From Anthoceros angustus (taxonomy: Eukaryota; Plantae; Anthocerotophyta), in contig VJWM01000222.1 of NCBI GenBank assembly GCA_010909165.1, positions 62,001-126,000 on the forward strand: 64,000 nt of DNA, in the 5' to 3' direction. The notes beneath the pieces were generated by a model. That model was not told the DNA's origin. It did no database searches and saw only the letters and a list, made by a program, of their open reading frames with translations. How positions within the stretch are numbered: position 1 is the stretch's first letter; the number at the start of each line of letters is the position of its first letter. Position numbers and translations under genes: made by a program. Shown one piece after another: positions 8,583-53,671 of the stretch.

Positions 8583-8589
8583 ATCCAAC

Positions 8590-12770: not shown

Positions 12771-12789
12771 CTTCTGCGTCATACCCAGA

Positions 12790-16520: not shown

Positions 16521-16699
16521 TGCGGTGGATCCCACATGGGCAGCCTCGGCGTTTTGGCTGGGTGTGCCCACCACCATCGACCATGTTACGATGGTGGGAG
16601 TGGCAGGCAGGCCACCCACAGCCATGAGGAGGGCCAGCCACTTGGAGGGCGATCGCGCCTGCCATGGTAGCGGAGTACTCGGGAGCACCCCGCATTCAG

Positions 16700-17110
16700 C
16701 CCACCAATCGCATGAATGTGCGAGTGAGCAATGCCATGGTGGACAATAGGGAAGGCCATGTCACGGTGAATGGCTATGCTCCCAAGCTTGTGCTCTTGGA
16801 CACGGGCGTGATCATTAGCAAGGCTCGCCAAACTGAACTTCAGGAACGGCACTCCGCCATTCACCCAATCGGGACAGCCATCTGTGGAACCCGTGTGTGA
16901 GGCTGTTCAGCCACATCACGCTCAAGCCGGGACAAGCTGCCATGACATTGGCCATTCATTGCCTTGTCACGACGGCTAACTTCGATGTCCTTCTCGGACA
17001 GGTTTTGTTTCCACCGCATCGTGGACAATTGACAGCAAGCTCACTACCGATTGGCGTGGTGAAGTGGCACTTTCCCTTGAATGCATGGCGGATTGGATCG
17101 ATCGCCACGT
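16700..17110 (+). pseudogene. pol: Family 2 aspartic protease
   Basis: RMNVRVSNAMVDNREGHVTVNGYAPKLVLLDTG(A)...; the downstream FDVLLG resembles the DxxLG flap motif. Confidence 0.78.
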
Positions 17111-17429
17111 CCTAGCTACTCCAGTCCTTATGGCGACCATTCAGGCTGTCCCCGAGGTGCTCCACAGCCAATATTTGGAATGCTGAGCTTGACCTTGTTC
17201 AGGATGGCTTTGATCAGACCACGAGGCTATCCGACTTGGTTCAGCTCTCACGCAGCTGCGCTTCAGATCACCTCCGATCCCCCATTGTTTCATGTCGCTC
17301 TCAGCATTGCTCTTCCAGGGACGATAAGTCCACCGCAGGAGCTCGACTATCAGCCCAGGACGCATCCCTCCACCACGGCAGCCAGCTCCAGCTGATCAGC
17401 ACGGACATGGCACCACCGCAGACTGTGCT

Positions 17430-18240
17430 GAAGTATGGTCCTCACAACTAATTGGTGGGTTGCGGCATCTTTCGTTACATTTTTGCCATTGCTTTTCGCC
17501 TTAGCTGCGGCTTCCCTTCACTACCCATGCTATCTCGTGCACCTTTTCTACTGATGCCCCAAGACATCCAGTAGCCGCCCATTCGCTCCACGGCCCCATC
17601 CACTTCGTGATTGCGGGATGGGAATGCCAAGGATTTTCTCAAGCCCAGGGGAGGATTACAAGACCCACGAACCGCCTTGTTTTGGGACCTTCACCGCATC
17701 TTGGTGGATGTTCAGCACTTGCCCAGGCTGCTGGAGAACACCTGGCAGTGGACACTCGGCTGCAAGTTCGCCAAGACATGGCCATCATCCAGCATGTGGG
17801 CACGCCCTTGCTCATGGATGCTGTCCAGTTGGCGGTTTGCTCATCGCGAAACTATTGGACCAACTGGCCCCTCAACCTTTGCTAGAGTTGGTGGTCACCC
17901 GCTACTCGGGACCCCACTCTCAAGCTCTCCAATGTGTTGGACCCTTGGCATCAGCCACGGGCGTGACAGTGCCGGCGTGCACCTTGGTACCCGCACCACC
18001 GGGGCAGGCAGCCCCTTCCCACCCTAGTGAGCTTTCCGGCTCCTATGCTCAGGGGACAAGGCAGGTCTGCTATTCAACAACACCCACCTGGGAGGAGCCC
18101 AATGTGGAGAGCGGGGCGCGTCATGGGTTTCCACACCCATGCCACTGCTGCTCCCAAGTTACCGTCACCGCCGGGCCGCCTTGGGCCGCTATGGATCTGT
18201 CACCCTCACTTGGCTCATCAGCATATGTCGGCCTTTCAGC
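17430..18240 (+). pseudogene. DNMT3-like C5-cytosine DNA methyltransferase domain within Gypsy Pol (copy A; motif I degraded here)
   Basis: PQDIQ...HGPIHFVIAGWECQGFSQA..GLQDPRTALFWDLHRIL (motifs III/IV, 17557-17705), LLENT (VI, 17728-17742), MDAVQ...AHR.RNYWTN (VIII), EPNVE...VMGFHTHATA (IX), RRAALG.AMDL..LTWLI (X). Confidence 0.88.
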
Positions 18241-18769
18241 TGTTGGCATTCCAGCTCCCCGCCCGAGGTCCTTTTCCCGTGCATCCATTTGCCCTTCCCG
18301 GATACACCACTGGTCATATTGGCTTGATGCGGGGGGAGGCAGTGGCATGGCCATGCATTCTCAGCATCAAGCTCTCGTGGACATGGGAAGCTGAATCTGG
18401 GGCGATCCAGTATGGGATCGTCCAGTATGGGAAGATTCGGAGTAGGGACTCCCAATTCAGCACCCAAGCCTCGCTTATGTCGAGACTTTCGTTGGGTCAT
18501 GGGGCCCCAACTCACAAGGCGGCAGATACATGCCCTTTTGCTCCAATACCGGGCTGTTTGCCTTCTCCATGCGGGAATTAGCGATGTAATGTGACCACCT
18601 TCGCATCAATCGACCAGCAAGGAGCCTATCAGGCGCTACTGGGCTCAGCAAACCGAGTGGGACATGGTGGATGCACTGTCAAGAGTTGCTTGAAGCCGGG
18701 CTCATTCGCCCCTCTAGCTCCGACTATCTGCTGCCACAGTGATGCCTCCCAAGAAGGACAACAGGATGT

Positions 18770-19240
18770 GGGCACGCCCTTGCTCATGGATGCTGTCCAG
18801 GTTGGCAGTTTTGCTCATCGCCTGCGAAACTATTGGACCAACCTGGCCCCTCAACCTTTGCTAGAGTTGGTGGTCACCCGCACTACTCGGGACCCCACTC
18901 TCAAGCTCTCCAATGTGTTGGACCCTTGGCATCAGCCACGGGCTGTGACAGGTGCCGAGCGTGCACCTTGGTACCGCACCAACACGCCGGGACAGGCCCG
19001 GCAGACCCTTCCCACCCTAGTGAGCTTTCCTGGCTCCTATGCCTACAGGGGACAAGGCGGCTGTTCAACAACACCCACCGAGCCCAATGTGGAGGAGCGG
19101 GAGCGCGTCATGGGTTTCCACACCCATGCCACTGCCTCCCAAGTTACCGAGCGTCACCGCCGGGCCGCCGGCGCTATGGATCTGTCGGCCCTCACTTGGC
19201 TCATCAGCATATGTCTGGCCTTTCAGCTGTTGGCATTCCC
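18770..19240 (+). pseudogene. Duplicated C-terminal half of the methyltransferase (motifs VIII-X)
   Basis: ORF 18591..19466 reads in one frame: GTPLLMDAVQVGSFAHRLRNYWTNLAPQPLLELVV...EPNVEERERVMGFHTHATASQVTERHRRAAGAMDLSALTWLISIC. Confidence 0.85.
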
Positions 19241-19559
19241 GCGGAGCTCCCACCCGCCCGAGGTCCTTTTCCCACATGTCAAATCCATTTGCCCTTCCCG
19301 GGATACACCACCTGGTCATATTGGCTTGATGCAGGGGGGGGGGGGCAGGTGGCATGGCCATCCCAGTCTGCATTCTCAGCATCAAGCTCTGGTGGACATG
19401 GGGAAGCTGAATCTGGGACAGTCCCGAGTATGGGACCGTCCCGAGTATGGGACAGTTCCGGAGTAGGGACTCCCAATTCACAGCCAGCACCCAAGCCTCG
19501 CTTATGTGCTGAGACTTTCGATTGGGTCATGGGGCCCCAACTCACAACGGGGCAGAAAG

Positions 19560-20850
19560 CACAGATACATGCCCTTTTGCTCCAATACCAGGATTGTTTT
19601 GCCTTCTCCATGCGGGGTGAAGCGATGTAATGTGACCACCTTCGCATCAATCGACCAGCAAGGAGCCTATCTACTGAGGCGCTACAGGCTCAGCAAAGAG
19701 TGGGACATGGTGGATGCACGCTGTCAAGAGTTGCTTGAGGCTCATTCGCCCCTCTAGCTCCGACTATCTGCGCCAGTGATGCCTCCCAAGAAGGACAGCA
19801 GGATGTGGACAGAGAAGAGGATGTGCGGAGACTACCGTCCTATCAACTCAGTGACAGCCCAGGATCGGTACCCCATGCCAACGCCGGAGGAGATTTTCGA
19901 CAACATTGGCAAGTCTACCTACTTCTCGATTTTGGATCTGCGTCAAGGCTTCAACCAGGTGCTGTTGCTGAAGAGGACATCAAGAAGACAGCCTTCCACG
20001 GCTCTCAACAGCTGTGGGAATGGCTGGTGATGCCCTTTGGCTTCAAGAACGCAGGTGATAGCGTAATGGACATAGTACTTGCGAGTTCAGAACCTCATGT
20101 GCTACATTGATGATGTCCTGGTCCACGAGGACTTTGAGTCTCATTTGGTGCACCTGGAAGATCTGTTCAAGAGATTGCGAAGGCGCGATTGACATGTCAC
20201 CAGTGTATTTGGCATGGACAAGTGGCATACCTTGGTCATAGGGTTGTGCACAGGCGTAATGCCTCATGCTGCCAAGGTACAGGCCATCTTGCAGGTGCGA
20301 GAGCCCACAACCTCTCGCCTTGCGAGCTTTCCTCGGCCTATGCAACTATTACCGAGTATACATTCGGGACTTGACCGGTGCCAAGCCCGAATGACTTGTC
20401 GGAAGGATGTTGTTTGGGCCTGGACGGAGAAGACCCAGCAAGCTTTAAACGCTGAGCTTGACGGAAGCTCCTGTCATGGCCAGACCTGACTTCTCCAAGC
20501 CGTTTGTGGTACATACGGATTGGAGCATCTTGGGCCTAGGGGCTGTGCTAGCCCAACAAGATGAAGATGGAAAGGAACGGGTGGTTGCGTATGCTTCACG
20601 CAGCAACAATCGTGAAGCCAACTCTGATAGCTACCAAGGGGAGTGCTGTATGGGGTTTGTCATTTAGGCCCTACTATGGCAAGCCCTTCACGCTAGTCAT
20701 CGACCATCAGCCCCTCAAATGGCTGATGACCAACACCAAGTTGAGTGGGAAGCTTGCAAGGTGGGCCATGATCTTGCAGGACTATGAATTTCAAGTGGTG
20801 CACCAGGGAGTCACACACCAAAACGCGGACACTCTCTCGGAATCCCGGTG
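19560..20850 (+). pseudogene. pol: Family 2 reverse transcriptase and RNase H
   Basis: MPPKKD...KRMCGDYRPINSVTAQDRYPMPTPEEIFDNIGKSTYFSILDLRQGFNQ, KTAFHGSQQLWEWLVMPFGFKNA, CYIDDVLVH, PDFSKPFVVHTDWSILGLGAVLAQQDEDGKERVVAYASR, KPFTLVIDHQPLKWLMT...LARWAMILQDYEF...NADTLS. Confidence 0.93.
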
Positions 20851-21129
20851 CTAGTTGCGAAGATGTTACAGAAGCGGACAGGACCAAGATGATGGAGATC
20901 TGCAGCATGTCGGTGGCTGCGATGGTGGCTTTGACAAGCACAGGTGGTCCAGTATGGGACAGTCCTTAGCATTGAGCACATATGCTGGGGACAGGAGGTC
21001 CAAGGACATCAGGAAGACTCAAAACTCTCCTATTTGTCCAAACAGGACAATTTGGATCAGCCATTGAGCACTGAGCAAGAAAGAATTAGCCGGTGCGCTT
21101 CCAAGTATCAATGGCGTGATGGGCATTTG

Positions 21130-21830
21130 CTGAGGAGGCTGACCAATGGGCTGGAACGATTGGTGCCACCACCTGCTGATAGGGAGCAGCTGATTTGTCG
21201 AGTGCACGATGACATGGGCCATTTGGAGTCAAGCGTGCACGGTTTGCTCCTCCGCATTTCCATTGGCAAGGGATGTACGCCCAAGTCAAGCGGTGGCTGT
21301 TGCAGGGGCTGACAGGTGAAGACCTCCTTCACCATCCGAACCCTCAGCTGCACCCTTTGCCTATCATGGGACTGTTCTTTAGGTGGTCTTGTGACTTGTT
21401 GGGTGAACTACCCAAGACACCACGAGGGCGTGTACATTCTCGTCATGATGGAGCACTTCTCCAAGTGGGTAGAGGTGGTGGCCCTGCCGGACAAGAGCTC
21501 CAAAAGCACCGCTCGGGCCTTTCTTCAGAATGTCTGAGTCGCTTTGGGAGGCTGCGAGTGCTTGACGGATCGAGTGCGAATTTGAGGAATTCCAAGACCC
21601 GCTGGGGCCGCTCATCGACCATCGCAGGACCAGCCGAGACCATCCCCAGGCTGATGGCCTGGCTGAACGGATGGTACAGACCATCAAGAAGGGTCTAAGG
21701 AAGCTCGCCTTCAAATGCCAAAAGGCAGTGGGACTTGGCTCTTCCTACATCGCCATGGCTACCGTGAGTCGGCATGCCTCCTTGGCACATTTCAGTCCCT
21801 ACTTCTTGCTGTTTGGGAGGGAACCCATGC
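21130..21830 (+). pseudogene. pol: Family 2 DDE integrase with H2C2 zinc-binding region
   Basis: RLVPPPADREQLICRVHDDMGH, FFRWSCDLLGELPKTPRG..YILVMMEHFSKWVEVVALPDKSSKSTARAFLQ, LTDR, AERMVQTIKKGL, FSPYFLLFGREP. Confidence 0.9.
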
Positions 21831-22229
21831 CGCCTAGCTCCATTGCCAAGCAACTCTATGAGGTAGTGGATCTGGATGATCCGCAATTTGAGCAGTCATC
21901 GGTCGTGCGTTGCTGCAAGCCATGCCGATGGCCATGGCTAATTTGAGGATTGCCCAACATCGGGACACCCTTAGATATGCCCACACTCGCAGCGACGGAC
22001 CCAAGCTCAAGAATTCGGTGGGGACTTTGTTTACTTGCGAAGCAAGTGGGACACCCTTGACACCACCACCCATCGACATGTGCTGCGAGTTCGGGAGGTC
22101 AAGGACAATGGTGTGCTAGTGCTACAAGGATCGAGATGGACCACCAAGGATCACATGAAAAATTGTGCGCCTTGCCATTTGCCCAACTGGATCCAACCAT
22201 TGTCACGGTGATTGGGTACCTCGGCTGAT

Positions 22230-22365: not shown

Positions 22366-22406
22366 GCCTCGGCGTCTGCACACACAAGCTTCAATGGCTG
22401 GGCAGA

Positions 22407-22760
22407 TGCTCTCCCAGCATATTTTGTTCTTTGCAAGGGGACCTTTGTGGCGGACTCATACTGGATCAAACTTTGGCCCCATTACTGTGATCCGAATCTT
22501 GGAGTGATGATAAGTGGGCTGGTAACAGGAGGCAAAGGCTGCAACGGGGATCAGCCATGGGACATGGCAGCCTGCTTGAGGCTGCCAGGGCTTGAGACAG
22601 CGTCGCCGGGGCTGGGGCCCATCAGCTTTGGGACATGGCAGTCACCGGGGACTAGGATCCCGCTATGGGACAAGGTCCCATAGTCCTCCAGCTAAGATTG
22701 GTGGAGTTGCCGGGACAAGCTCATACTGGGACCGTGGTCCCAAACTTTTCACGCTTCACA
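22407..22760 (+). repeat. Family 2 LTR (about 350 bp)
   Basis: TGCTCTCCC...TTTTCACGCTTCACA. Homologous copies at 23525-23878, 41805-42149, 43039-43398, 53672-54031 (-) and 54805-55141 (-). Preceded by a purine tract (GGGGTAGGAG in copies B and E). Confidence 0.72.
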
Positions 22761-23520
22761 CGGATCGGAGGTTGCCAAGACCATCCTAGACATGGGACAT
22801 GGCGTCCACAGCCGGACCGGGATCGCCATGGGACATGGTAGTCCCAGGAGGGGCAGCCAGCCATGGGACGTGGGTCCACTGCGGATTGCCGCAACCCACC
22901 AGCCCAACGTCAAGACACAAGAACTAAGGTACACATGCAAAGAATGTGAACTCGATGTATGCTTGCTTTTATATACTACGTTTGGTTAGGCATTTTCATT
23001 AACCAAGGACATGAAAACATATCCTTTATTTTGATTGGCCCATAGTCCAAGGATTCATTTCCTTTAAATACTAGTTATAGGAAATAGATCCGTTATGAGC
23101 GGATAACTAGGTAGGCTAGACAAAGCCACTTAGTTTAGGTGTGAAACCAAAGCGGACCCAAACCCAAACAAGGCACCGATCAACGTGGGAGGAGCACCAC
23201 CAAGCGTGAGGGTTGCTTTCGCATCATGGCGCAAACATCAGCTGGGAATCGAGCTGGGCGGGCGTGGAGATGATGGCGGCGGGAATGAGGACCGTGGGGC
23301 AAGGAACAGAGGGTAGTCTTGATCGTGGGCGGTTGGGGAGGAAAGCACTTTGTGAACCCTTGCAATCTGGAAATCCAAGATCGATTAGATCTGTGTTTTG
23401 CTCGTGCTTCCTACAAGGCGCCAAGGCTCGATTCTGGCTCAGCCAGCAAAGCTCGGCTGGCCAAGAAATCTTCAAGAAATCTCGTGATTCCGCCATTGCT
23501 TGGCGGATCCCTTTTAGGAG
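22761..23520 (+). repeat. Family 2 leader region between tandem LTRs (GC-rich dyad repeats, then an AT-rich block)
   Basis: Homologous to 30785-31650, 42150-43030, 45880-46680 (-) and 54040-54800 (-). Contains the conserved TTTATTTTGATTGGCCCATAGTCCAAGG...TTTAAATACTAG block. Confidence 0.75.
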
Positions 23521-23524
23521 CAGA

Positions 23525-23878
23525 TGCTCTCCCAGCATATTTTGTTCTTTGCAAGGGGACCTTTGTGGCGGACTACTGGGATCGAAACTTTGGCCCCATT
23601 CAACAAGTCCGAATCGGAGTGACGATAAGTGGGCTGGTAACAGGAGGCAAGGAGCTGCAACTAGGTCCCAGCCATGGGACATATCCATAGCCGGCTGGGC
23701 AGTCCAGCCTTGACAAGGCGATCCCAGCCGGGCGGGCCCCATCGGCTTTGGGACAGTCCCAGCCGGGCTGCCGCCAGCTATGGGACAAGCGGTCCCATAG
23801 TCCTCACTAAGATTGGTGGAGTTGCCCGGGACAAGCTCATACTCGGGACACGGTAGTCCCAAACTTTTCACGCTTCAC
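23525..23878 (+). repeat. Family 2 LTR, second tandem copy
   Basis: Same start (TGCTCTCCCAGC) and end (TTTTCACGCTTCAC) as 22407-22760. Preceded by TAGGAGCAGA. Confidence 0.72.
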
Positions 23879-23880
23879 GG

Positions 23881-30779: not shown

Positions 30780-33700
30780 AAAGGGTCAGAGGTTGCCAGA
30801 CCGCCCTGATATAGACATGGTACACAGGACGGCCGGGGCCCATGGGACATGGCCCCACTGGCCAGGGACGGGCCCCAGCCAATGGATGGCGGGCCCAAAG
30901 CCCGACCATGGGACATGGCGATCCACAATGGATGGGGCTGCAGGGGCCCCAGCCATGGGACATGGCGATCCGGCCCGGACACGGATTGGGCCGCCATGGG
31001 ACATTGCGTCCACAGCCGGATGCCGGATCGCCGGGGCTGCAGCCCGTCACCACCAACGTCAAACACAAGGACTAAGGTACTAAAAGAATGTGAAGTTGAT
31101 GTATGTTTGTTTTATAAACTACGCCTAGTTGGTCATTTTTAACCAAGAACATGTCCTTTATTTTGATTGGCCCATAGTCCAAGGATGCATTTCTTTTAAA
31201 TACTAGTTCTAGAAAATAGATCCGTTATGAGCGGATAAGTAGGTCAAGAATAGCCTTAGCTATAGGTGTGAAAGGGCTAAGTATAGGCCCCAAATGCTGC
31301 GTGTGTTCAAGCGTGGGAGAGGAAGAACCAAGAGCGTGAGGCTGTAGCATTGCATCATGGCGCAAGAATCTGGAGGAACGCTAAGCGGGCGTGAGGATGA
31401 TGACCAAGCGTGAGGATGAGGACCCGAGGCGAGATCCGAGGGTTTCGGTCAAAATCGGCGCTGGAGCGCTATTCTTTGTTGGGAACCAAAGCACTTTGTG
31501 AATCTGGCGCAATCCATGAATCAAATCGTGTAGATCTGCAGTTTTGCTCACCATGTGTCTCCGCTGCAGGCGTAAGGCGTGATTCTGGACTCAGCCAGCG
31601 CAAAGCTGGGCTGGCCAAGGAAGCTTCAAGAAAACCACGATTCGCACCCATTGCGGGGCAAATCTCATTTCGGCGATCTTCCAGGGACGTTCTCCAATCC
31701 GGGCGGCGATATTCTAGGCGCCTCCCCACCTAGGGCGGCGCCATTACGGGAGGGCCATTGGGCGATTCTGACATCAACGTCTTTTCCGAGGCCCAATCCA
31801 CGGGGCATTGGTCACCTGGGATTTGAGCTAACACAGCGGGTCCTCCATGTACCTGATCACTCCCGATTCAGATCTTGCATCCGGCAGTCCTAGCTTAGGC
31901 GGGCTACAGCCTTGTGCAACGACTAGGGACAAAATCAGTGAGTTTCTTGTTCATTTTCAATTCCGAGCTTAGCATTCGGGATCTCTAGCTTGGGTGGGTT
32001 CTGACTTTGCCGGACAATGAGGCAGATCCTACCCACTTCCATCTCCATCAAGGATCGAGAGGTAGGCAAGGTGCGGCTTAGCGAATTTGACATTTCAATC
32101 ATTCAATCAGCGGATCATTTGAGCTGTAGGCGTTGCTAGAACAATAGTCCACACGGAGCTACGGGAACCTCTGGAAATTCAAGCACATGGGTGAGGATAT
32201 TTTTGGCTGACCTCTAGGGTCCCTAGGAGGCATCCCATATTCGGGGCTCCCATCTGCCGGGGCTGGAGAGTCCCAACAAAAGGACATTACTGATCCCACG
32301 CCGGGATACTTTGGAAGGAGCTTTCACACGAGCTTGAGCAACAGGAGGCGGGTTGTCCTTGGGAGCTTGCTTCCCATCTTTTTGGGAGTGACTCGGCGAC
32401 CTCGTGTTTTGCTCACATGGGTGATGCACCACGAAGGACATGAGACCGATCCTCGCTACCGTTTGAGGCAGGATATCGGCGGCGGACCACTCCGGCGAGT
32501 CACAGCCGGAAGGAGGCGTTCTTTTCAACACGGCAAGCACGGAGGAGTTGTGGCGGTTTACGGGGAGCTGGCACGCCACTGCCACCTTGGAGGCGACAGG
32601 TGGTCTCCATTTGCGAGATCTCAACACCGGCAAAGAATCATCCGACTCCTTGGGAGATCGACCGGGACAAACTTGTCCCAATTTGAGCCTTCTGAGACAA
32701 GATCGAATCGGTGATCTTTGAGATCGGACACCATGGAAGGTGGAGGACCCTCATACTGACGGAGAGATTTTCCGGGAGGCGGGCACTCGATCGGCGAGAT
32801 TTTGTCCCTCAACGCTATCATCAACCGGGTCGAGGTTCAAACATGGCGCCGCTTATAATCACCGGTACATGTTTGAGAAAGCTACTTGGCGGACGGTAGC
32901 GCCGGATTTGTATGAGGCACATCAAGCGGTTTGTCTTCTACCATCTCCACGGTGAATCCCCGGTTCAAGGAGCGCTGCGGCTTGCCTACAATGGCAAGTT
33001 GGCCACGTTGTGGAGTGCCCACCAGGCCAAGATTGCTTGCTGGGACGATCGCGGCCACACCGTAATCCGTGGTGAGTCTAACGGCGAGGAGGGTGGCGTG
33101 GTTGGGGTCCGAGTTCATCCAAACTCCCAAGTACCAATCAAATCCGTGGAAGAGTTCATGGCCATTCTTGAGGCGTTTCCGCTCAAGACTCACGAGAAAA
33201 TAGTGAGCTGTGACTTCGATGCAAGAAGGGTGAGACTGTCAGATGACCTTCGCGGGCTCCGGAAGGCTGCGAGCACTAGGATGTTGTGACCAAGAGGCAG
33301 AAGTTTCTTTACTGGCGTTGGGGGATCCATTGTTCCACTTTCAACTTGTCACCTCTTTAGTGGACAAGTATGGGGACAACTACACCACAGAACAGGTCCA
33401 TGAAGAAGCGGAGCGCAAAAAATCAGCGTTTTCAGCGTATGCTTCTCGACACTCCAAGGCCTTCACGCACTATCAAAGTATGTTTTCCAAAAGGGAACAC
33501 ATGCAGGCGTGGGATCGTGGGTTTCCAAGCCCATTCAGGCCAGGCAGTCAAGTCAAGTAGCGCAAGCCCACCTCCACACTGTGCTGCAGCATGGCGGCCG
33601 GATCATTTGGCTCGGCAGGCAAGCTTCCTGTGGAAGGTTTGCATTGTTCCCATTACGCAAGACTGGCCATTTGGTTACAATTACGTTTCCGAGCTTGTCC

Positions 33701-35504
33701 GGGCTGAGATATCAAGAGACGGGTCCACACACCTTGGGACTCCCACAGCGGCTGGGCGGTTAAATGCGTCGAAGGGCCGATCACGGAATGGGGCCAAGGC
33801 CAAGGAGCGGCTAGCACGACAAGATTGCATTGGAGGCAGCGGTGGCAGCACTTACTCGGCTAAGCCCAGCTGATGGCGGCACCTCCACCTCCAAGCCCAG
33901 GCCATTTGGCACCCGTGAGGAGGAGAGGAGGATTATGGCCCTGCACATGAGGCTGTCTTGTCCACTGTCTTGTGGATTCACGCCTGATTACCCGCCACAT
34001 GGGTGGGATGTGACTTGAAGAAGGCGCATTTGGATGTTGCGGTGGGGATCGATCCTTACTCGGCAACAAAGAGCCGAGGGCTGCCATGCCTAGATCCTTT
34101 GCTCCGCTGCCAGGCGTGGCCATCCTGTTCGTGGGCGGGATCATCCGGATGGAGGCGCCGAGTGGCGGCCTCCACATTCAGTCATGGGGCACCGCCGAAT
34201 GCTTGTGGCCGCATCTGCCACTACACTGAGCCTTGATCATAAGGTGTTGGAGACTCCTTTGATCTCCCTCCGGACATGGGAGTTGGGCGTGCTCGATTCT
34301 GACGTGCTGGGCTTGGCCTTGTTGAAACCTCCGCATGTCCCCTGGATGCAGGAGGTCCCGGACACTGGGTCCATGCATGGGGCTGCTGGGGACACCTCAA
34401 GCAGGCACACCACAGCTCCATGTTCGAGGCTGTCGGAGAGTGACTGGATTCTCAGTCCATACTCGGGGCATAGTGGAGTCTCAACGGGACTTAGCGATCC
34501 CATACTCGGGGCTGCTGAGGCCTCGGCCTTGGTCCTCAGCAGTCCACACACAGGGGTAGCGACAAAGTAGCCCCAATGCCAAGCACCTTCAGCTCCATGC
34601 AGGATCTGCGAGGAGAAACCCATCACTGGACTGCAGTCCCATACTGGGAGCTGCCGGGGCGGTGGATCCCATGGGCCTCACCACCCGGGCTGGGTATTGC
34701 CCACCACCATCGACCATGTTACGATGGTGGGAGTGAGGCAGGCCACCCTGCCATGAGGAGGCCCACTTGGAGGCGGTCGCGCTTCTGCGTCCAGTGGAGT
34801 ACTCAGAGCACCTCGCATTCAGCCCACCAATCGCATGAATGCAGTGAGCAATGCCATGGTGGACAATAGGAAGGCCATGTCACGGTGAATGGCTATGCTC
34901 CCAAGCTCTTGGACACGGGCACGTGATCATTGAGCTCTCGCCGCCAAAGTTGAACTTGCGAGGCGGCACTCCGCCATTCACCCGAACATCGGAGCCTACC
35001 GCGCTGTGGAACTGTGTGTGGAGAGGCGCTGCAGCCATCGCCATCACGCTCAAGCCGGGCAGCCCTTCCATGACATTGGCCATTCATTGCCTTGTAAACT
35101 TAACTCGATGTCCTTCTCGGACAGGAGTTTTTGTTTCCACCGCATCAGCGTGGACAATTGGACAGACAAGCTCACCACGATTGGCGTGTGGAGGTCGACA
35201 GCGCACTTTCCCTGAATCGCATGGCGGATTGGACACCAAGGTCGCCCTTGTCCTAGCTACTCCAGTCTATATGGCGACCATTCGGGCTGTCCCGGTGCTC
35301 ACGACACCAGCATTTGAGTGACATGGAGCTTGCCGACGGATCCGAGATCACGAGGCCGACCATTTGGTCACAGCCGGCTGCCTGGAGACACTCCACCATC
35401 ATTCAAAGTGTCCGACCTGACAGCAAGCTCTTCCACGAGTGCAGCAAGCTACGTAACCAGCCTCCCCTTGGGCTGACGAGGCATCCTCCACCACGGTGAG
35501 CAAT

Positions 35505-38500
35505 AGATCATCACGTGGGCGCCCACTGCATTACCTGCTTGGGGGTATTTGCACGTGTCTGGAGGCTCTTGCTGAATGGCATCTTGGTCGTCGTTACATT
35601 CTGTGGCTGTTGTCCCAAGGCGCAATGCATTGCGCACCTTGGGGCTGGCGTGATTCACTACCCCCGCCACTATCTGCACCTTTTCATTTTCGGTGCCCAA
35701 GACATCCAGTTGTGCCAGGCCACATTCGACTCCCTGCCCCATCCACTGATTCGGGATGGGAATGGGAGAACACGATAATTTTGAAGGGGATATCATTGCC
35801 GGCGACACCTTGTCACGAAGAACACCTTACCTAGAGCGACATATGTGCCCTACTTTGATAATGCACACACCCTTTACGAGGTCATATCTTTGATAAAAGA
35901 TGCACTTTCAAGTCTACACCGAGCTGAGCACTAGGGTGTGGGCCCGTTGCGTTTAGTAGAATGCATAGAGGGCTGCCATTTCATATCATATGAAAACTTT
36001 TACTTTCAAGTGGTGGAACACAATGAAAACAATCTGTACTAGCGAGTCTCATTTAAGTGGTCGTGAGAACATTGCAACAAACAAGCTGCTGAAGGAGAAG
36101 TGGTCATCGGCATCGACAATAGCCATTCAAGAGTGCGGCTGGCGACTCATCCATGCCTTGCGGCGGAGTCAAGTACCACCGCCATATTCGGGTCCATATC
36201 CTCCGCCTCGAAGTTGTCGTTCTCCTCCATTGCTTGCTTCTAGTATCATTCTTGGGCCCGTCCGGTGTCGGCCACCACATCTAGGGTCTGCGACCCTCAT
36301 CCAAAAAGGTCGTCGTGGTCTTCAACCTTCGGCACTCAATGCAACCACTTGGGCTTTAAGGCAATGCTAGCGTCCTTAAAATGAACAAAGTTAGTTGCCC
36401 ATGCGCCATGCAAGCATCCTTAAAATCAACAAAATTGAACTGTTGAGGAGGCAGAGGTTTGAACACGAAACCTATTCATTACTACACTTATTTCCCAAAC
36501 ACTAGACCAACAATGAGTTGAATACTGAGGCGCTAAATATTTATTTTGGAAGGCGCCTAGGAGGAGGCCATGGGCAGGCATGGCGTGTGCTAAGGGCAGG
36601 CAGTGTGCTGGGGAGGCGGGCGGCCGGCGCATGGGCGGGGTTGCTAGGGGCGGCCCGGCGCATGTGTGCTAGGGAGGCGCCCGGCCCGGCGCCATGGCGG
36701 CGGGCGTGTTGGGGGGGCGTGGCCCGGCCCGTGTGTGCTAGGGGCGCCCGGCCCATAGCAGTGTGCTAGGGAGGCGGCGGCCGGCGAGCATGGAGGCGCG
36801 GTCGTGGCGCCCTCCCTCATCCTGGTGCATCTGGGTGAAGCTAGGGGGACAAAAGAGGGGCGGTATCCTATCACCGATGGAAGGTGTGGCCCATTTGCGG
36901 GAAGGGTTAAAAGATTTGCGTCCATAGGTGGTGTTGTTGAAGAGTATAAGTGGTGGGAAGCCTTTTGTTGGACGGAAGGAGATTGCTATCGTTGTGGAGA
37001 ATAACATTGGGCTAGTGCTACTGTCCTTGGAAGTGGTTTTCACGTGCAGTGGATCATCTGACTGACCACTTCAAGTGCGGATGAAGCTTTGCTAGATGAG
37101 GCATTATTGAGGACCTCCACGGTGATATGTATTTGGGGGCATATCAAAATGCGGGAAGGCAAGCTGCGGAAATGGCACGGATGAATGGGGACATAGAAAT
37201 CCGAGAGGATGTTTACGGCGGTGCCGTGCAATACGGACATGCATCCATTACGGATTGGGGAGGTCATTGGCGTGAAGCTAAGCGCACCACGACCTCACTT
37301 TCTTATCCACTAGTATCGGACCGAGCACATAGATGCGTATGAAGGGAGATATGTGCGAGGAACACATAGTCATGGTGGTAACCCATCGGTCCAATCTTAG
37401 GAAAAAGGGAATAAGATCCATTACCTAAAAACATCTGAGGTATTTGTAGATGAAACGGTCATCACTGTATTATGGGTTTTGTGTTGAGCATGGAAACATC
37501 GTATGCGGTGGACAAAAGCGATAAGGGATAAGCTCTGCGAGTTCGTGGCTTCATACAACTGCGGTGAAAGTGTCGTGAAGATAGTGATGACAATGGAGGA
37601 GAAAATTTGGACCAAGTGATGACGATGGATTGAACTACGGGGATGAGTGGCGAAATCTCGTTTTCCGGGGTCCCGAGTTAATGTTGTAAGTCCGGTTCTT
37701 GATGTTTACATGTTAGGAAATACCACACTGTGTGGCTTTTGTGGTGTCATAACAAAACCACATTTCCATCCCAAAAGCGAGTTCTGATCGTCTGCGGCGA
37801 GCAGCCTTCCTCACCGTTCCTACTTTGCATCATTCCCTAGGTTCGAGTTTGCGACCACCATTCGACACAAACATTCTTTGGATGGAAAGTAGTAACTTTC
37901 TTTGGGTGACACCCTTTTTGAATTTGTTTTCCGCAATGCCTTCATGTTGTTTAGGGCCCATCAAAACCCCTTGATTATTTGCGGAAAACCCTCCGAGATT
38001 ATTCACCCCTTAAAATTATCGTGTTCAGGATTTTCTCAAGCCGACAGGGGAGGATTACAAGATCCACGAACCGCCTTGTTTGGGACCTTCACCGCATCTT
38101 GGTGGATGTTCGAGCACTTGACCGGCCGCTTACTGCCGGAGAACTGGACACTTTGGACACTCGGATGCAAGTTAAGCAAGACATGGCCATCATCCAAGCC
38201 ATGAGGGCACGCCCTTGCTCATGGATGCCGCCCGTTGGCGTTTGCTCATCGCTGCGAAACTATTGGACCAACGGCCTCAACCTTTGCTAGAGTTGGTGAT
38301 CACCCGCACTACTCTGGGACCCCACTCCAGCTCTCAATGTGTTGGACCCTTGGCATCACCACGGGTGGCAGAAAGGTGCCGTGCACTGGTATCAAGACCG
38401 CCACAGCGGGACAGCTGGCACCCTTCCCACCCTAGTGAGCTTTCACGGCTCCTATGCCAGGGACAAGGCGGGTCTGCTATTCAACATACCCACGGTGGGA

Positions 38501-38640
38501 GGAGCCCAATGTGGAGGGCGGGGAGCGTCATGGGTTTCCACACCCATGCCTGCTGCGACTCCCAAATTACCAGCGTCACCGGCCGCCTTGGGCCGCTATG
38601 GACCTGTCTGACCCTCACTTGGCTCCTTGACATGCAGCCT
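35505..38640 (+). pseudogene. DNMT3-like methyltransferase of copy B, split at motif IV
   Basis: 5' part: LLGGICTCLEAL/LLNGILV..Y...CPKAQCIA, QDIQ, GW(E). 3' part resumes AGGATTTTCTCAAGCC...GLQDPRTALF...RNYWTN...GFHTHA. Confidence 0.85.
35768..38026. mobile_element. 2.26-kb insertion with about 21-bp terminal inverted repeats (probable non-autonomous DNA transposon)
   Basis: Left end GAACACGATAATTTTGAAGGGG; right end CCCCTTAAAATTATCGTGTTC (reverse complement GAACACGATAATTTTAAGGGG). Absent from the other methyltransferase copies. No transposase recognised. GC-rich internal repeat at 36545-36830. Confidence 0.78.
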
Positions 38641-41600
38641 TTCGGCTGTGGCATTCCAGGAGCTCCCACCCGCCCAAGGTCGCTTTTCCCACATGCTGGC
38701 GCTTCGTATTTGTCATTTGCCCTTCCCGGGATACACCACTGGTCATATTGATGCGGGAGGCGAGTGGCATGGCCATCCGATGCATTCTCAGCATCAAGCT
38801 CGTGGACATGGGAAGTGAATACTCGGGGCGATCCGAGTATGGGATCGCAGGGGAGTATGGGAACGATTCGAGTAGGGACTCCCAATTCACCGGCACCCAA
38901 GCCTCGCTTATGAGACTTTCAGTTGGTCATGGGGCCCCAACTCACAACAGGCACGAGATACATGCCCTTTGCTCCAATACCGTGTTTTGCCTTCTCCATG
39001 CGAGAATTGAGCGATGCAATGTGACCACCTTCCGCATCAATCGACCAGCAAGGAGCCTATCTACGAGGCGCCAGCTCCAAAGCCGAGTGGGACATGGTGG
39101 ATGCACGTCAAGAGTTGCTTGAAGCCGGGCTCATTCGCCCTCTAGCTCCGATTATCGCGCCAGTGATGCCTCCCAAGAAGGACAGACGGATGTGGGCAGA
39201 GAAGAGGATGTCTCGGAGACTACCGTCCTATCAACTCGGTGACAGCCCGGGATCGGTACCCCATGCCAACGCCGGAGGAGATTTTTACAACATTGGCAAG
39301 TCTACCTACTTCTCGATTTTGGATCTGCGTCAAAGGCTTCACATTTTGTTGCTGAAGAGGACATCAAGAAGACAGCCTTCCACGGCTCTCAGCAATGGGA
39401 ATGGCTGGTGATGCCTTTGGCTTCAAGAACAGCGGTGACATTCCGGTAGCGTAATGGACATAGTACTTGCGAGGTTCTGAACCTCATGTGCTACATTGAT
39501 GATGTCCTGGTCCACGCGAGGACTTTGAGTCTCATTTGGTGCACCTGGAAGATCTGTTCAAGAGATTGCGAAGCGATTGACATGTCACCCGCCAAGTGTG
39601 AATTTGGCATGGACACCGTGGCATACCTTGGTCATAGGGTCATGCACAGGCGGCGTAATGCCTCATGCTGCCAAGGTACAGGCCATCTTGCGGTCACGAG
39701 CCCACAAACCTCTACGCCTTGCGAGCTTTCCTCGGCCTATGCAACTATTACCGAGTATACATTCGGACTTGAGAATTGCCAAGCTGAATGACTTGTCATG
39801 CGGAAGGATGTTGTTTGGGCACACGAGAAGACCCAGCAAGCTTTGACACCTGGCGGAAGCTTGACGGAAGCTCCCCGACTGACTTCTCCAAGCCGTTTGT
39901 GGTACATACAGTTGGAGCATCTTAGCCTAGGGGCATGCTAGCCCAACAAGATGAAGATGGAAAGGAGCGGGTGGTTGCGTATGCTTCACGCAGCAACAAT
40001 CGTGCTGAAGCCAACTACGATAGCTACCAAGGGGAGTGTCTAGCTGTATGGGCGGTTTGTCATTTGAGGCCCTACACATGGCAAGCCCTTCACGCTGTCA
40101 TGACCATCAGCCCCTCAAATGGCTGATGACCAACACCAAGTTGAGTGGGAAGCTTGCAAGGTGGGCCATGATCTTGCAGGACTATGAATTTCAAGTGGTG
40201 CATCGAAGAGTCACACACCAAAATCACGGACACTCTCTCGGAATCCCGGTGCTAGTTGCGAAGATGTTAGAAGCGAGGCAGGACCAAGATGATGGATCGC
40301 AGCATGTGCCGTGGCTGCGATGGTGGCTGACAAGCACAGGTGGCTTTGTCGGGGCAGTATGGGGCATCCAGTATGACGAGGATCCTTAGCATTGAGCACA
40401 TATCTTTGGGGAAGGAGGGTCATCCATGGGACACTCTATTTGTCCAGGGGAGTTTGGATCAGCCATTGAGCATGAGCAAGAAAGAATTCGCCGGTAGCGC
40501 TTCCAAGTATCAATGGCGTGATGGGCATTTCTTGAGGAGGCGACCAATGGGCTGGAACGATTGGTGCCACCACTGGCGATAGGGAGCAGCTCATCGTGCA
40601 GTGCGATGACATGGGCCATTTGAGTCAAGCGTGCTACAGTTTGCTCCTCCCATTTCCATTGGCAAGGGATGTCGCCCAAGTCAAGCGGGTGGCTTTGTGC
40701 AAGGCTGCGCAGGTGAAGACCTCCTTCACCATCCGGAACCCTCATGCACCTTTGCCTATCATGGGTATTCTTTAGGTGGTCTTGTGACTTGTTGGGTGAA
40801 CTACCCAAGACACCACGAGGGCGTGTACATTCTCGTCATGATGGAGCACTTCTCCAAGTGGGTGGAGGTGGGTGGCCTGCCGGACAAGAGCTCCAAAAGC
40901 ACCGCTCGAGCCTTTCTTGAGAATGTCTTTGAGTCGCTTTGGGAGGCCGTGCTTGTGGATCGAGGGGTGCAATTTCGAGGGAATTCCAAGACCCCTCTGG
41001 ATCGCGCTCATCGACCATCGCAGACCAGCCGAGACCATCCTCGGCTGATGGCCTGGCTGAGCGGATGTGCAGACCATCAAGAAGGGTCTAAGGAAGCTAC
41101 GCCTTCAAATGCCCAAAGGCAGTGGGACTTGGCTCTTCCTTACATCGCCATGGGCTCTGCGTATGAGTCGGCATGCCTCCTTGGCGCATTTCAGTCCCTA
41201 CTTCTTGCTGTTTGGGAGGGAACCCATGCCTAGCTCAATTGCCAAGCAACTCTATGAGGTAGTGGATCTGGATGATCCAATGAGCATGTGGGTCATTGGT
41301 CGGTGCCTGTTTGACAAGCCATGCCGATGGCCATAGCTAATTTGAGGATTGCCCAACATCGGGACACCCTTAGATATGCCCACACTCGTGGCGACTTCGG
41401 ACAAGCTCAAGAAATTTCGGTGGGGACTTTGTTTACTTGCGAGCAAGTGGGAGACACCTTGACACCACCACGACATGTGTGCGAGTTCGGAGGTCAAGGA
41501 GAATGGTGTGCTAGTGCTACAAGGATCGAGATGGACGTACCACCAAGGATCACATGAAAAATTGTGCTTGCCATTTGCCCAACTGGATCCAACCATTGTC

Positions 41601-51690: not shown

Positions 51691-53670
51691 GCTCCACTAG
51701 CGAGGTGGGCGAGAGGGCCCCAGCATTGGGATTCTCAGTCCCATACTCGGGACAGCCGGTGGAGGCTCAACAAGAACTCAGCGGTCCCATACTCGGGGCT
51801 CAGAGGAATCTCGGCCTTGGCCCTCAGCAGTCCACACACAGGGCCCGCTGATCCCAATGCGAACACCTTGACTCCATGCCAAGGACTGAGGAGAAGCCCA
51901 TCATCGGGCCTCGCGATCCCACACTACAGCAGTGAGTGGATCCCACATGGGCAGCCTTACGGCGTTTGGTGGGTATTGCCCACCACCATGGACCATGTTC
52001 GATGGTGGGAGTGGCAGGCGAGCCACCCAGCCATGAGGAGGGCCAGCCACTTGGGAGCGGCGCACCTATGCTTCCAGTAGCTACTCGGGAGCACCCCCGC
52101 ATTTAGCCCTGTCGCATGAATGTCTTGCAGTGAGCAATGCCATGAGTGGACAATAGGAAGGCCATGTCACGGTGAATGGCTATGCTCCCAAGCTTGTGCT
52201 CTTGGACCACGAGGAGCGCAGTGATCGTGATCATTGGCAAGGCTCTACTTGAGGTTGAACTTGCGAGGCGACACTCCGCCATTCACCACAGGAACATCGG
52301 GCAGCCTCTGCAGCTATGGAACTGTGTGTGGGAGAGCTGTTCAGCCAGCAGCCATCACGCTCAAGCAGGACGGCCAGCTGCCATGACATTGGCCATTCAT
52401 TGCCTTGTCACGGCGCTAACTTCTGATGTCCTTCTCGGACGGGGTTTTTGTTTCCACCGGCATCAGCGTGGACAATTGGGCGAGCAAGCTCACTACTCCG
52501 ATTGGCGTAGTGGAGGTCGACAAGTGGCGCACTTTCCTTGAATACTGCATGGCGGATTGGACAAAGTCGCCCTTTGTCCTGGCTACTCAGTCCTTATGGC
52601 GACCATTGAGGTTGTCCCAGTGCTCGGCGGCGGCCCGGCATTTGGTGACATCTTGGAGCTTGCGACTTGGATCGAGATCACGAGGCCGACCATTTTGATC
52701 ACGTGACTGCTAGGAGACACTCCACCATCATTCAAAGTGTCCAGGCTGGTTCAGCAAGCTCTTCCACAGTGCAGCAAGCTCTGCAGCACTCCCCTTGGGC
52801 GGGAGCTGCACCTTCCACCACAATGAGCCGGCGGATCATCACGTGGTGAGCGCCACCTCGGCATTACTTTCTTTGGGCCTGGGGGCATTGCCTGGTGCAG
52901 AGGCCCTTTTTCTGAATGGCATCTTGGTCGATCGTTACATTTATTGTGACCATTGTCCCAAGGCGCAATGCATTCTTTGCTTTTCCTTCGGGGAGGCTGT
53001 GACGTGATTCCCTTCACTACTTCCGCCAATGCTATCGGGCACCTTTTCTGATGCCCAAGACATCCAGTGTTGCCGCCACATTCAGCTCCAGCCCCATCCG
53101 CCGTGATTGCGGGATGGGAATGCGAGGATTTTCTCAAGCCGACACAGGAGGATTACAAGACCCGCGAACATGTTTTGGGACCTTCACGCATCTTGGTGGA
53201 TGTTCAGCCACTTCAGCCATTGCTTACTATTTGGAGAGAACACCTCGGCGGTGGACACTCGGTACAAGTTCGCCAAGACATGGCCATCATCCGGCGGCGT
53301 AGGCACGCCCTTGCTCATAGATCTTTATCGAGTTGGCGGTTCGCTCATCGCTGCGAAACTATTGGACCAACGGCCCCTCAACCTTTGCTAGAGTTGGTGG
53401 TCACCCGCTTTTCTCGGGACCCCACTCTCAAGCTCTCCGTGTTGGACCCTTGGCATCGGCCACGGGCTGTGCAGTGCGGCGTGCACCTTAGTACCGCACC
53501 AACATGCGGGGCGGGCGGCGACCCTTCCACCTAGTGAGCTTTCACGGCTCCCTATGCCTACGAGGGGACAAGGCGGTGCACTGTTCAACTTGACAACACC
53601 CACCGGTGGGAGGGCCCAATGTGGAGGAGGCGGGAGGCGTCATGGGTTTCCACACCCATGCCCTTCTTGT
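51690..53670 (+). mobile_element. Family 2 fragment D (mirror of C): linker, protease, methyltransferase
   Basis: FLNGILVDRYIYCDHCPKAQCI (52905-52975), VIAGWEC (53103-53123), AHR.RNYWTN, GFHTHA. Confidence 0.85.
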
Positions 53671-53671
53671 C

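What the first reader, a model, noticed from the sequence alone, without database searches (positions are those of the whole stretch)
17430..19240. Gypsy retrotransposon family carrying a complete DNMT3-like cytosine methyltransferase between protease and RT
Seen in sequence: a consensus from six segments (17430-18240, 18770-19240, 23885-24680 minus, 35505-38640, 52860-53665, 58230-58900 minus) gives the C5-MTase motifs in order. These are L.GGICT.LEALLLNGILVDRYIYCDHCPKAQCI (I/II), PQDIQ...HGPIHFVIAGWECQGFS (III/IV), LLENT (VI), MDAVQVGSFAHRLRNYWTNL (VIII), EERERVMGFHTHAT (IX) and RRAALG.AMDL (X). Established: the corresponding mammalian DNMT3A segments, recalled from memory, are [76 protein letters not shown] and RQRLLGRSW, so the domain is DNMT3-type in sequence and spacing. 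Retrotransposon-borne DNMTs were reported in Symbiodinium and charophyte algae (de Mendoza et al. 2018, Nat Commun; recalled, please verify), so the concept is not new. This family, host and architecture may be. Inference: because the domain sits right after the protease, it could be released from the polyprotein, packaged with RT and used to methylate the new cDNA or the insertion site.
Basis: partly seen in the sequence, partly recalled or inferred. Interest (0 to 1): 0.92.

Follow-up and report, generated by a model that had tools for sequence, protein, structure and literature searches.

The report
Plant retrotransposon carrying a DNA methyltransferase
This plant genome holds several copies of a jumping gene that carries its own DNA-methylating enzyme of the type cells use to silence such elements; the design is already known from a green alga, but the papers I could search do not report it in land plants.

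Summary
All six segments match, in order, a profile built from 30 intact relatives of this methyltransferase (MT); the best piece, 18759-19208, scores 158 bits, E 3e-47.

The window holds three copies of one Ty3/Gypsy-type family, plus two inverted PR-MT fragments. Gene order is PR - MT - RT - RNase H - integrase - PHD finger. Intact relatives carry the same order in one open reading frame: a 2358-aa metagenomic polyprotein, Closterium proteins, and a nearly intact copy in the liverwort Calypogeia fissa.

The MT is DNMT3-type. The profile's best solved-structure match is DNMT3A (9e-20), ahead of DRM and bacterial enzymes. A predicted structure of a relative (pLDDT 90.8) matches only DNMT3A/B/C in its top 50.

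Most algal and metagenomic relatives instead place the MT between RNase H and integrase.

The element has split direct repeats (b-coding-a-b-a), the layout published for KnitGypsy-Dnmt3 of Klebsormidium. I therefore class it as a land-plant member of a known kind.

Caveat: the assembly is full of indel errors, so the frameshifts do not show that the copies are dead. The proposed self-methylation of the element's DNA copy is untested.

First readers of this scan noted the same element at least 32 times elsewhere in this genome.

The parts
16688..16822 (+). Copy A: aspartic protease core (LLDTGV at 16793-16810)
   Evidence: tblastn with the protease-bearing ORF of the Calypogeia fissa element L005, 46% identity; motif scan
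17418..18167 (+). Copy A: DNMT3-like C5 methyltransferase, motifs III to X, read across several frames
   Evidence: tblastn with P0002 and P0232; profile A1 pieces at positions 86-306; three-frame translation
18762..19808 (+). Copy A: tandem duplicate of 17790-18771 (MT C-half, linker and start of RT). It contains the one long unbroken MT piece, 18759-19208
   Evidence: Self-blastn shows 2.2% substitutions and 11% gaps. Profile A1 scores 158 bits, E 3e-47. Related contigs of run X1 skip 17792->18762 and 18760->19803, so they lack the duplication
19454..20845 (+). Copy A: reverse transcriptase (YIDD at 20103) and RNase H
   Evidence: Pfam RT_RNaseH and RT_RNaseH_2 on window pieces; tblastn
21010..21990 (+). 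Copy A: integrase (zinc-binding and core domains)
   Evidence: tblastn with P0002, P0232 and L005, up to 66% identity over 101 aa
22020..22380 (+). Copy A: PHD finger after the integrase, broken by a frameshift
   Evidence: tblastn with P0232 and the L005 PHD ORF; cysteine/histidine pattern visible in two frames; Pfam PHD in relatives
22402..23878 (+). Copy A: 3' split direct repeats a-b-a (a 22402-22759, b 22791-23682, a 23520-23878)
   Evidence: blastn; same layout in copy C, copy B and Calypogeia L005
23880..25686 (-). Inverted partial copy: protease (25394-25257) plus MT (24629-23884)
   Evidence: Self-blastn; profile A1; tblastn
30906..43390 (+). Copy C with the full repeat layout: b 30906-31652; gag-like 32879-34657; protease region to 35293; MT N-part 35505-35770; unrelated 2.26-kb insertion 35770-38027; MT C-part 38027-38640; RT/RNase H 38896-40314; integrase 40605-41392; PHD 41422-41747; a 41793-42141; b 42296-43188; a 43026-43390
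   Evidence: Self-blastn; tblastn; Pfam rve on 40631-41230
51729..53662 (+). Inverted partial copy next to copy B: protease region plus MT (52879-53662)
   Evidence: Self-blastn; profile A1
53671..63998 (-). Copy B, which runs off the window end: protease 59726-59343; MT 58906-58249; RT 57946-57151; RNase H 56974-56699; integrase 56596-55403; PHD 55585-55213; repeats a-b-a 55171-53671
   Evidence: Self-blastn; tblastn; profile A1

Best explanation
The window holds copies of one Ty3/Gypsy-type retrotransposon family of a land plant. Earlier unchecked notes of this scan say the plant is probably a hornwort.

The polyprotein order is (gag)-protease-DNMT3-like C5 cytosine methyltransferase-reverse transcriptase-RNase H-integrase-PHD finger. 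The element ends in split direct repeats (b-coding-a-b-a) rather than plain LTRs. It is a land-plant member of the streptophyte 'Gypsy-DNMT3' kind first described in Klebsormidium nitens.

Shown here:
- the domain identity, order and repeat layout;
- the same order in one reading frame in intact relatives;
- conservation of the catalytic Cys, the ENV Glu-Asn and the RxR arginines across the family;
- strong purifying selection on the MT in three relatives.

Inferred, at about 40% odds: in working copies the MT is made as part of Pol, is cut out or stays joined to a neighbouring domain, travels with RT and integrase, and methylates the new DNA copy or the insertion site. The PHD finger would read histone tails to steer integration.

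Whether the copies in this window can still work cannot be told, because the assembly is full of indel errors.
For: Domain order in the window.

Family profile on the window: 158 bits, E 3e-47 for the best piece, with ordered pieces in five of the six segments.

Relatives: 481 hits, 270 of them at E<=1e-10, mostly polyproteins. PF00145 exceeds its gathering score in P0011, P0043, P0139, P0141, P0136 and P0232.

Same order in single ORFs: P0136 (2188 aa) and P0232 (2358 aa, PR-MT-RT-RH-IN-PHD), plus Closterium proteins. Junction-spanning ORFs occur in L003 and in Calypogeia fissa L005.

DNMT3 type: profile against solved structures gives DNMT3A 9e-20, ahead of 3C and 3B, then DRM 1e-11, M.HhaI 2.5e-8 and DNMT2. 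The AlphaFold model has pLDDT 90.8, and the top 50 Foldseek matches are all DNMT3A/B/C with TM about 0.8.

Conservation: Cys, Glu-Asn and Arg-x-Arg are invariant in 30 sequences with a mean column identity of 45%. Among three intact relatives the MT has dN 0.20-0.26 with dS saturated, so dN/dS is about 0.1 or less.

Tree: the window's MT falls in the cluster of PR-MT-RT elements (SH-aLRT 84).

Repeat layout: b-coding-a-b-a in copy C and in Calypogeia L005 (b 676 bp at 96.9%, a 125 bp at 100%). This matches the 'A-coding-B-A-B' layout stated for KnitGypsy-Dnmt3 (PMC5890265).
Against: No window copy reads through, and Pfam finds no PF00145 in the window's own pieces.

Motif IV reads Trp-Glu-Cys instead of the usual Pro-Cys throughout most of the family, which could lower or change activity.

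In the published yeast test the Klebsormidium retrotransposon MT gave no detectable methylation; the authors call that result inconclusive (PMC5890265).

No run on record as RNA holds the stretch, and the two runs guessed to be RNA may be DNA.

Placement in a DNMT reference tree was not done. The land-plant and hornwort identity rests on earlier unchecked notes.
Confidence: 0.8

Rival explanations
1. The MT domain is kept but no longer methylates DNA. It would serve as a DNA- or chromatin-binding module, or as a DNMT3L-like partner that recruits or blocks host methyltransferases.
For: Motif IV has Glu (WEC) in place of the near-universal Pro of the Pro-Cys pair in most family members. The Klebsormidium retrotransposon MT showed no activity in yeast, though the authors call this inconclusive (PMC5890265).
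Against: The nucleophile Cys, the ENV Glu-Asn, the RxR arginines and the motif I glycine are invariant across 30 diverged sequences. That pattern is not expected for a dead scaffold such as DNMT3L. A minority of members keep WPC. The SymbioDIRS-Dnmt3 enzymes of the same general kind do methylate CG in yeast.
Confidence: 0.2
2. The copies in this window are dead relics of an extinct family, so the MT has no present role in this plant.
For: Every copy shows many frame breaks and stops. Copy C carries a 2.26-kb insertion inside the MT. Copies A and B are tied to inverted fragments. Substitution differences between copies are 2-14%. CpG observed/expected is 0.57-0.65 with excess TpG and CpA, a sign of long methylation decay.
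Against: Gap letters make up 9-14% of every copy-to-copy alignment, whatever the substitution level. Short DNA contigs of the same organism match with 0 substitutions but 3-12 gap letters per 100-120 bases (table 8). Most frameshifts are therefore sequencing or assembly errors. Contigs of 3.1-3.2 kb from the family, 90-95% alike, exist in another run.
Confidence: 0.35
3. The MT is a piece of a host DNMT3 gene, or a separate insertion, that happens to lie inside the element and is not part of its Pol.
For: None beyond the broken frames in the window.
Against: The same junctions occur in copies A, B and C. Intact relatives encode PR-MT-RT-RH-IN(-PHD) in one ORF. ORFs in L003 and L005 span the junctions. 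Label changes on the trees are far fewer than in shuffled labels: PR-MT-RT elements group together in the MT tree (SH-aLRT 84) and all but one do so in the RT-RNase H tree (SH-aLRT 87).
Confidence: 0.02

Closest known systems
KnitGypsy-Dnmt3 of Klebsormidium nitens (de Mendoza et al. 2018, PMC5890265; called 'streptophyte Gypsy-DNMT3' in bioRxiv 10.64898/2026.05.21.726589)
   Same: Both have Gypsy-type domain content, an unrearranged DNMT3-type MT inside the Pol ORF, a DIRS-like split-repeat layout (A-coding-B-A-B), conserved catalytic residues with purifying selection, and a streptophyte host.
   Different: The host here is a land plant rather than a charophyte alga. The element carries a PHD finger after the integrase, which the held text of the paper does not mention. 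The MT position in the Klebsormidium element could not be read, because the figure is not held. No Klebsormidium sequence was on hand for a direct comparison.
Relatives with the order RT-RNase H-MT-integrase-PHD (P0002, P0011 and others; Haematococcus lacustris, Cymbomonas tetramitiformis, many metagenomes)
   Same: The MT is homologous (36-48% identity to the window's C-half) and has the same WEC-type motif IV. The RT, RNase H and integrase are homologous, and a PHD finger follows the integrase.
   Different: The MT lies between RNase H and integrase, not between protease and RT. These elements form a separate, well-supported group in the RT-RNase H tree (99).
SymbioDIRS-Dnmt3 of Symbiodinium (PMC5890265)
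   Same: A DNMT3-type MT sits inside the Pol of a retrotransposon with split repeats. Two different domain orders exist, and CG methylation was shown in yeast.
   Different: These are DIRS elements with a tyrosine recombinase instead of a DDE integrase, in a dinoflagellate host, and the acquisition was independent.
Mammalian DNMT3A/3B catalytic domain
   Same: It is the best match by profile (9e-20) and by fold (TM about 0.8). Motifs I-X are in the same order, and the motif VIII and IX sequences are similar.
   Different: Identity is about 20%. The retrotransposon MT has Trp-Glu-Cys instead of Ser-Pro-Cys in motif IV, a longer segment between motifs VIII and IX, no PWWP or ADD domain, and is part of a polyprotein.
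Chromoviruses (Gypsy elements with a chromodomain after the integrase)
   Same: A chromatin-reader domain is attached to the C-terminus of the integrase.

Membership tests
C5 cytosine DNA methyltransferase (Pfam PF00145) | Motifs I, IV (catalytic Cys), VI (ENV), VIII (RxR), IX and X in the canonical order | tested here: met
   Motifs are found in the window. Pieces lie in order on the family profile. Cys, Glu-Asn and Arg-x-Arg are invariant in 30 relatives.
C5 cytosine DNA methyltransferase (Pfam PF00145) | Score at or above the Pfam gathering threshold (22 bits) | tested here: inconclusive
   The window's own ORF pieces give no hit, because frameshifts fragment the domain. Relatives pass: P0136 46.1 bits, P0139 41.3, P0232 32.5, P0141 29.5, P0043 26.9, P0011 25.2.
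C5 cytosine DNA methyltransferase (Pfam PF00145) | Pro-Cys pair in motif IV | tested here: not met
   The window has GWECQGFS, and the family mostly has WECQDLS. Only a minority has WPC. The Cys is kept and the Pro is replaced by Glu.
DNMT3 subfamily | Closest to DNMT3 among characterised methyltransferases, by sequence profile | tested here: met
   DNMT3A 9e-20, DNMT3C 1.5e-17, DNMT3B 5e-17, DRM 1e-11, M.HhaI 2.5e-8, DNMT2 1e-4. DNMT1 is not listed.
DNMT3 subfamily | Fold closest to the DNMT3 catalytic domain | tested here: met
   This was tested on the relative P0136:965-1320, not on the window copy. Model pLDDT is 90.8, and the top 50 Foldseek matches are all DNMT3A/B/C.
DNMT3 subfamily | Motif order not permuted (this separates it from DRM) | tested here: met
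   Profile positions rise along each copy from motif I to motif X.
DNMT3 subfamily | Placement inside the DNMT3 clade in a tree with reference DNMT classes | not tested
   No reference set of DNMT1, 2, 3, 4, 5, 6, DRM and CMT sequences could be obtained.
Ty3/Gypsy LTR retrotransposon | Pol order protease-RT-RNase H-integrase with Gypsy-type RNase H and integrase domains | tested here: met
   Pfam RT_RNaseH, RT_RNaseH_2 and rve hit window pieces. The order is shown, with the MT inserted after the protease.
Ty3/Gypsy LTR retrotransposon | Two plain long terminal repeats | tested here: not met
   The element has split direct repeats instead: b-coding-a-b-a in copy C and in Calypogeia L005.
Streptophyte Gypsy-DNMT3 (KnitGypsy-Dnmt3) | DNMT3-type MT inside the Pol ORF of a Gypsy-type element | tested here: met
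Streptophyte Gypsy-DNMT3 (KnitGypsy-Dnmt3) | DIRS-like repeat layout A-coding-B-A-B | tested here: met
   Copy C: b 30906-31652, a 41793-42141, b 42296-43188, a 43026-43390. Calypogeia L005 has the same layout. The paper's wording is quoted.
Streptophyte Gypsy-DNMT3 (KnitGypsy-Dnmt3) | Sequence kinship with, and the same domain order as, the Klebsormidium copies | not testable with these tools
   No Klebsormidium sequence turned up among the named hits. The figure showing the domain order is not held.

The most novel reading that the evidence does not exclude
One retrotransposon lineage carrying both a DNA-methylation writer (a DNMT3-like MT with a WEC catalytic loop) and a chromatin reader (a PHD finger) may have persisted from green algae into bryophytes. 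In this reading the MT moved once from the RNase H/integrase junction to the protease/RT junction, in the line leading to Zygnematophyceae and land plants. The lineage would still be active in bryophytes, where it methylates its own new DNA copies. TE-borne DNMT3 copies would then also inflate or confuse counts of DNMT3 genes in early land-plant genomes.
Probability: 0.3. Interest if true: 0.7.

Novelty: new member of a known kind. Interest (0 to 1): 0.5.

Why it matters
Cells use DNMT3-type enzymes to silence transposons, so a transposon that carries one is a striking reversal. It has been documented in dinoflagellates and one charophyte alga.

This result extends the Gypsy-DNMT3 kind to land plants: this genome and a liverwort. 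It shows that the kind is widespread in Closterium and in environmental sequence. It also shows two gene orders with related methyltransferases, both paired with a PHD finger.

That gives plant systems in which the self-methylation idea could be tested. It also warns annotators that DNMT3-like hits in bryophyte genomes may belong to transposons.

Tried and rejected
- Pfam on eight window ORF pieces of the MT gave no PF00145 hit. This reflects fragmentation, not absence.
- phmmer of P0002:600-960 against solved structures gave nothing. The profile was needed.
- I looked for close relatives of the window's own family in the protein collections. The best identity was only 48%, so no intact copy from this plant was found.
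- RNA evidence is inconclusive. No holder is on record as RNA, and runs X1 and X5 are only guessed to be RNA. Expression is neither shown nor excluded.
- I could not find the domain order of KnitGypsy-Dnmt3 in the paper's text or supplements, and no Klebsormidium proteins appeared among the named hits.
- I looked for a 5' copy of repeat b upstream of copy A (11000-14600) and found only a weak 90-base match.
- The RT-RNase H tree could not decide whether the two gene orders are sister lineages. They meet MT-less Gypsy elements at a weak node (support 49), and many 'MT-less' rows are cut gene models.
- The low CpG of the copies is compatible with self-methylation, but host methylation explains it equally well.
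- I considered and rejected a host-gene fragment or nested insertion as the source of the MT (see rival explanations).
Full report
**What is in the window**

The region 17430-19240 and the five other segments carry the quoted methyltransferase (MT) motifs at the stated places. No copy reads through; the motifs lie in different frames. Pfam finds no PF00145 in eight ORF pieces taken from the window.

The longest unbroken piece is the 291-aa ORF 18591-19463, which covers motifs VIII-X. Searched against 1.84 billion representative proteins, it finds 481 relatives, 270 of them at E<=1e-10. Many are polyproteins of 1200-3400 aa with the match in the middle. Several of these pass the PF00145 gathering score.

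I built a profile from 30 intact relatives (A1) and searched it against all stop-free stretches of the window. It finds pieces in the right order in five of the six segments. The best is 18759-19208 at 158 bits, E 3e-47. In the sixth segment, 35505-38640, only one piece scores, and the motifs carry the rest.

**Anatomy**

Self-comparison and tblastn with intact relatives show three copies of one family.

- Copy A (+ strand): protease 16688-16822, MT 17418-18167, RT/RNase H 19454-20845, integrase 21010-21990, PHD finger 22020-22380.
- Copy C (+ strand): 30906-43390, with an unrelated 2.26-kb insertion inside the MT.
- Copy B (- strand): 63998-53671, cut by the window end.

Two inverted protease-MT fragments lie at 23880-25686 and 51729-53662. 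A and its surroundings (12151-30805) match B and its surroundings (63998-46662) as one inverted 18.6-kb duplication. A and B with their fragments are therefore not independent.

Copy A also has a tandem duplication: 17790-18771 matches 18762-19808 with 2.2% substitutions. Related contigs of another run lack it.

Downstream of the PHD finger all three copies have repeats in the order a-b-a. Copy C has a further b upstream, giving b-coding-a-b-a.

**Quality of the sequence**

Gap letters make up 9-14% of every copy-to-copy alignment, about one gap opening per 13 bases. This holds whether substitutions are 2% or 14%.

Short DNA contigs of a run from what appears to be the same organism lie on the window with 0 substitutions but 3-12 gap letters per 100-120 bases, mostly letters missing from the window (tables 4 and 8).

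Natural decay does not look like this. The assembly is rich in indel errors, as two earlier agents noted elsewhere in this genome. The frameshifts therefore say little about whether the copies are dead.

**Is the methyltransferase part of Pol?**

Yes, in relatives.

- P0232 (2358 aa, metagenome) has protease 663-711, PF00145 953-1137, RT 1443-1596, RNase H, integrase and PHD 2300-2344 in one ORF. Its 8.26-kb unit occurs in tandem at 99.8% identity.
- P0136 and four close relatives have gag zinc knuckle-protease-MT-RT-RNase H-integrase.
- Closterium proteins in NCBI have the same order.
- In L003 (Logan contig) one ORF runs from the MT into the RT.
- In the liverwort Calypogeia fissa (L005, GCA_965154635.1) one ORF holds the protease and the MT N-half. 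After a single in-frame stop come the MT C-half, RT-RNase H, integrase and PHD.

**Which kind of methyltransferase?**

The family profile matches solved DNMT3A chains best (9e-20). DNMT3C and DNMT3B follow, then plant DRM (1e-11), M.HhaI (2.5e-8) and DNMT2. The three aligned blocks cover motif I, motifs IV-VIII and motifs IX-X, in order.

An AlphaFold model of P0136:965-1320 has pLDDT 90.8. Its 50 best Foldseek matches are all DNMT3A/B/C, with TM about 0.8 on the target.

The catalytic Cys, the ENV Glu-Asn, the RxR arginines and the motif I glycine are invariant in 30 sequences with a mean column identity of 45%. Among three intact relatives the MT has dN 0.20-0.26 while dS is saturated. The MT is therefore under purifying selection.

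One oddity stands out. Motif IV reads Trp-Glu-Cys in most members, the window included, instead of Pro-Cys.

**Two gene orders**

Of the multi-domain relatives found with the MT, most have RT-RNase H-MT-integrase-PHD. These include Haematococcus, Cymbomonas and many metagenome contigs.

The window, Closterium, Calypogeia, L003, P0136 and P0232 have protease-MT-RT instead.

In the MT tree the protease-MT-RT elements and the window form one cluster (SH-aLRT 84), and each order needs only one change of label.

In the RT-RNase H tree the RNase H-MT elements form one group (99). All but one of the protease-MT-RT elements form another (87), which also takes in cut gene models from Calypogeia and Closterium. 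Their mutual relation to MT-less Gypsy elements is unresolved.

A shared WEC motif and a shared PHD finger argue for common descent with one move of the MT. This is inference.

**Comparison with what is known**

De Mendoza et al. 2018 (PMC5890265) described KnitGypsy-Dnmt3 in Klebsormidium nitens. It is a Gypsy-type element with an unrearranged DNMT3-type MT in Pol, conserved key residues, Ka/Ks below 0.2, and repeats laid out as in DIRS elements, A-coding-B-A-B.

Copy C shows that same unusual layout. So does the Calypogeia element, with b 600-1275 matching 11146-11821 at 96.9% and a 11019-11143 matching 11822-11946 at 100%.

A 2026 preprint refers to 'streptophytes (Gypsy-DNMT3)' as known. 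The kind is therefore known.

Searches of the held literature found no report of it in land plants. The 2018 paper treats the acquisition as specific to the Klebsormidium lineage.

The domain order of the Klebsormidium element could not be read, because the figure is not held. I therefore class this as a new member rather than a new variant.

**Mechanism**

What supports a working enzyme is conservation and selection, plus the published CG methylation by SymbioDIRS-Dnmt3 in yeast. What weighs against it is the Glu in motif IV and the inconclusive negative result for the Klebsormidium MT in yeast.

CpG observed/expected of 0.57-0.65 in the copies, against 0.79-0.83 elsewhere in the window, shows a history of CG methylation. 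It does not say who did the methylating.

I put about 40% on self-methylation of the new DNA or the insertion site, and about 20% on a non-catalytic role. The rest is open.

**Limits**

- The host identity (land plant, probably a hornwort) comes from earlier unchecked notes.
- Expression is not shown.
- First readers of this scan noted the same element at least 32 times on other pieces of this genome. That fits a high copy number but is not independent evidence.

Noticed in passing
whole window; measured on the copy pairs listed and on 17400-22400: The assembly has a very high indel error rate. Gap letters make up 9-14% of every repeat-pair alignment, whatever the substitution level. Short DNA contigs match with 0 substitutions but 3-12 gap letters per 100-120 bases. 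Frameshifts in any gene of this genome should not be read as pseudogenisation.
   Followed up: partly
12151-30805 (+) and 63998-46662 (-): An inverted duplication of about 18.6 kb (7-8% substitutions). It contains a whole element copy, its 3' repeats, an inverted protease-MT fragment and about 5 kb of unexplained sequence. On both sides it is followed by another copy of repeat b (30906-31652 and 46377-45907).
   Followed up: partly
17790-18771 and 18762-19808: A tandem duplication inside copy A (MT C-half, linker and start of RT) with only 2.2% substitutions. Related contigs of run X1 lack it. It may be recent, or it may be an assembly artefact.
   Followed up: partly
35770-38027: A 2.26-kb insertion inside the MT of copy C. 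It has no match elsewhere in the window, and I identified no protein family in it.
   Followed up: no
22020-22380, 41422-41747, 55585-55213: A PHD finger follows the integrase in all three copies and in nearly all relatives of both gene orders. It sits where chromoviruses have a chromodomain.
   Followed up: partly
52-432 and 11936-12322; 3857-4945 (-): A direct repeat pair of about 390 bp (92.9% alike) lies 11.9 kb apart and encloses weak RT-like matches on the minus strand. It is probably another LTR retrotransposon without an MT.
   Followed up: no
L005 (Calypogeia fissa, CBCUJL010000031.1:3116264-3134768), element at 600-11946: A nearly intact liverwort copy of the same design. The public annotation calls only the RT-integrase part as a gene and leaves the MT unannotated.
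   Followed up: yes
L006 (ENA ERZ25067493), 1-18272: An 8261-bp unit encoding an intact 2358-aa PR-MT-RT-RH-IN-PHD polyprotein is repeated head to tail at 99.8% identity. This is either tandem elements sharing repeats or a circular assembly of a repeat.
   Followed up: partly
family-wide; window 17616-17639 and 24395-24418: Motif IV of the MT reads Trp-Glu-Cys in most members of both gene orders, in place of the Pro-Cys of nearly all C5 methyltransferases. A minority keep Trp-Pro-Cys.
   Followed up: partly
P0254, P0256 and P0257 (Haematococcus lacustris); P0073 (Cymbomonas tetramitiformis): Chlorophyte genomes carry the RT-RNase H-MT-integrase(-PHD) version, annotated only as hypothetical proteins. 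The Cymbomonas protein may or may not be one of the 'EpiLTR' elements of the 2026 preprint.
   Followed up: no
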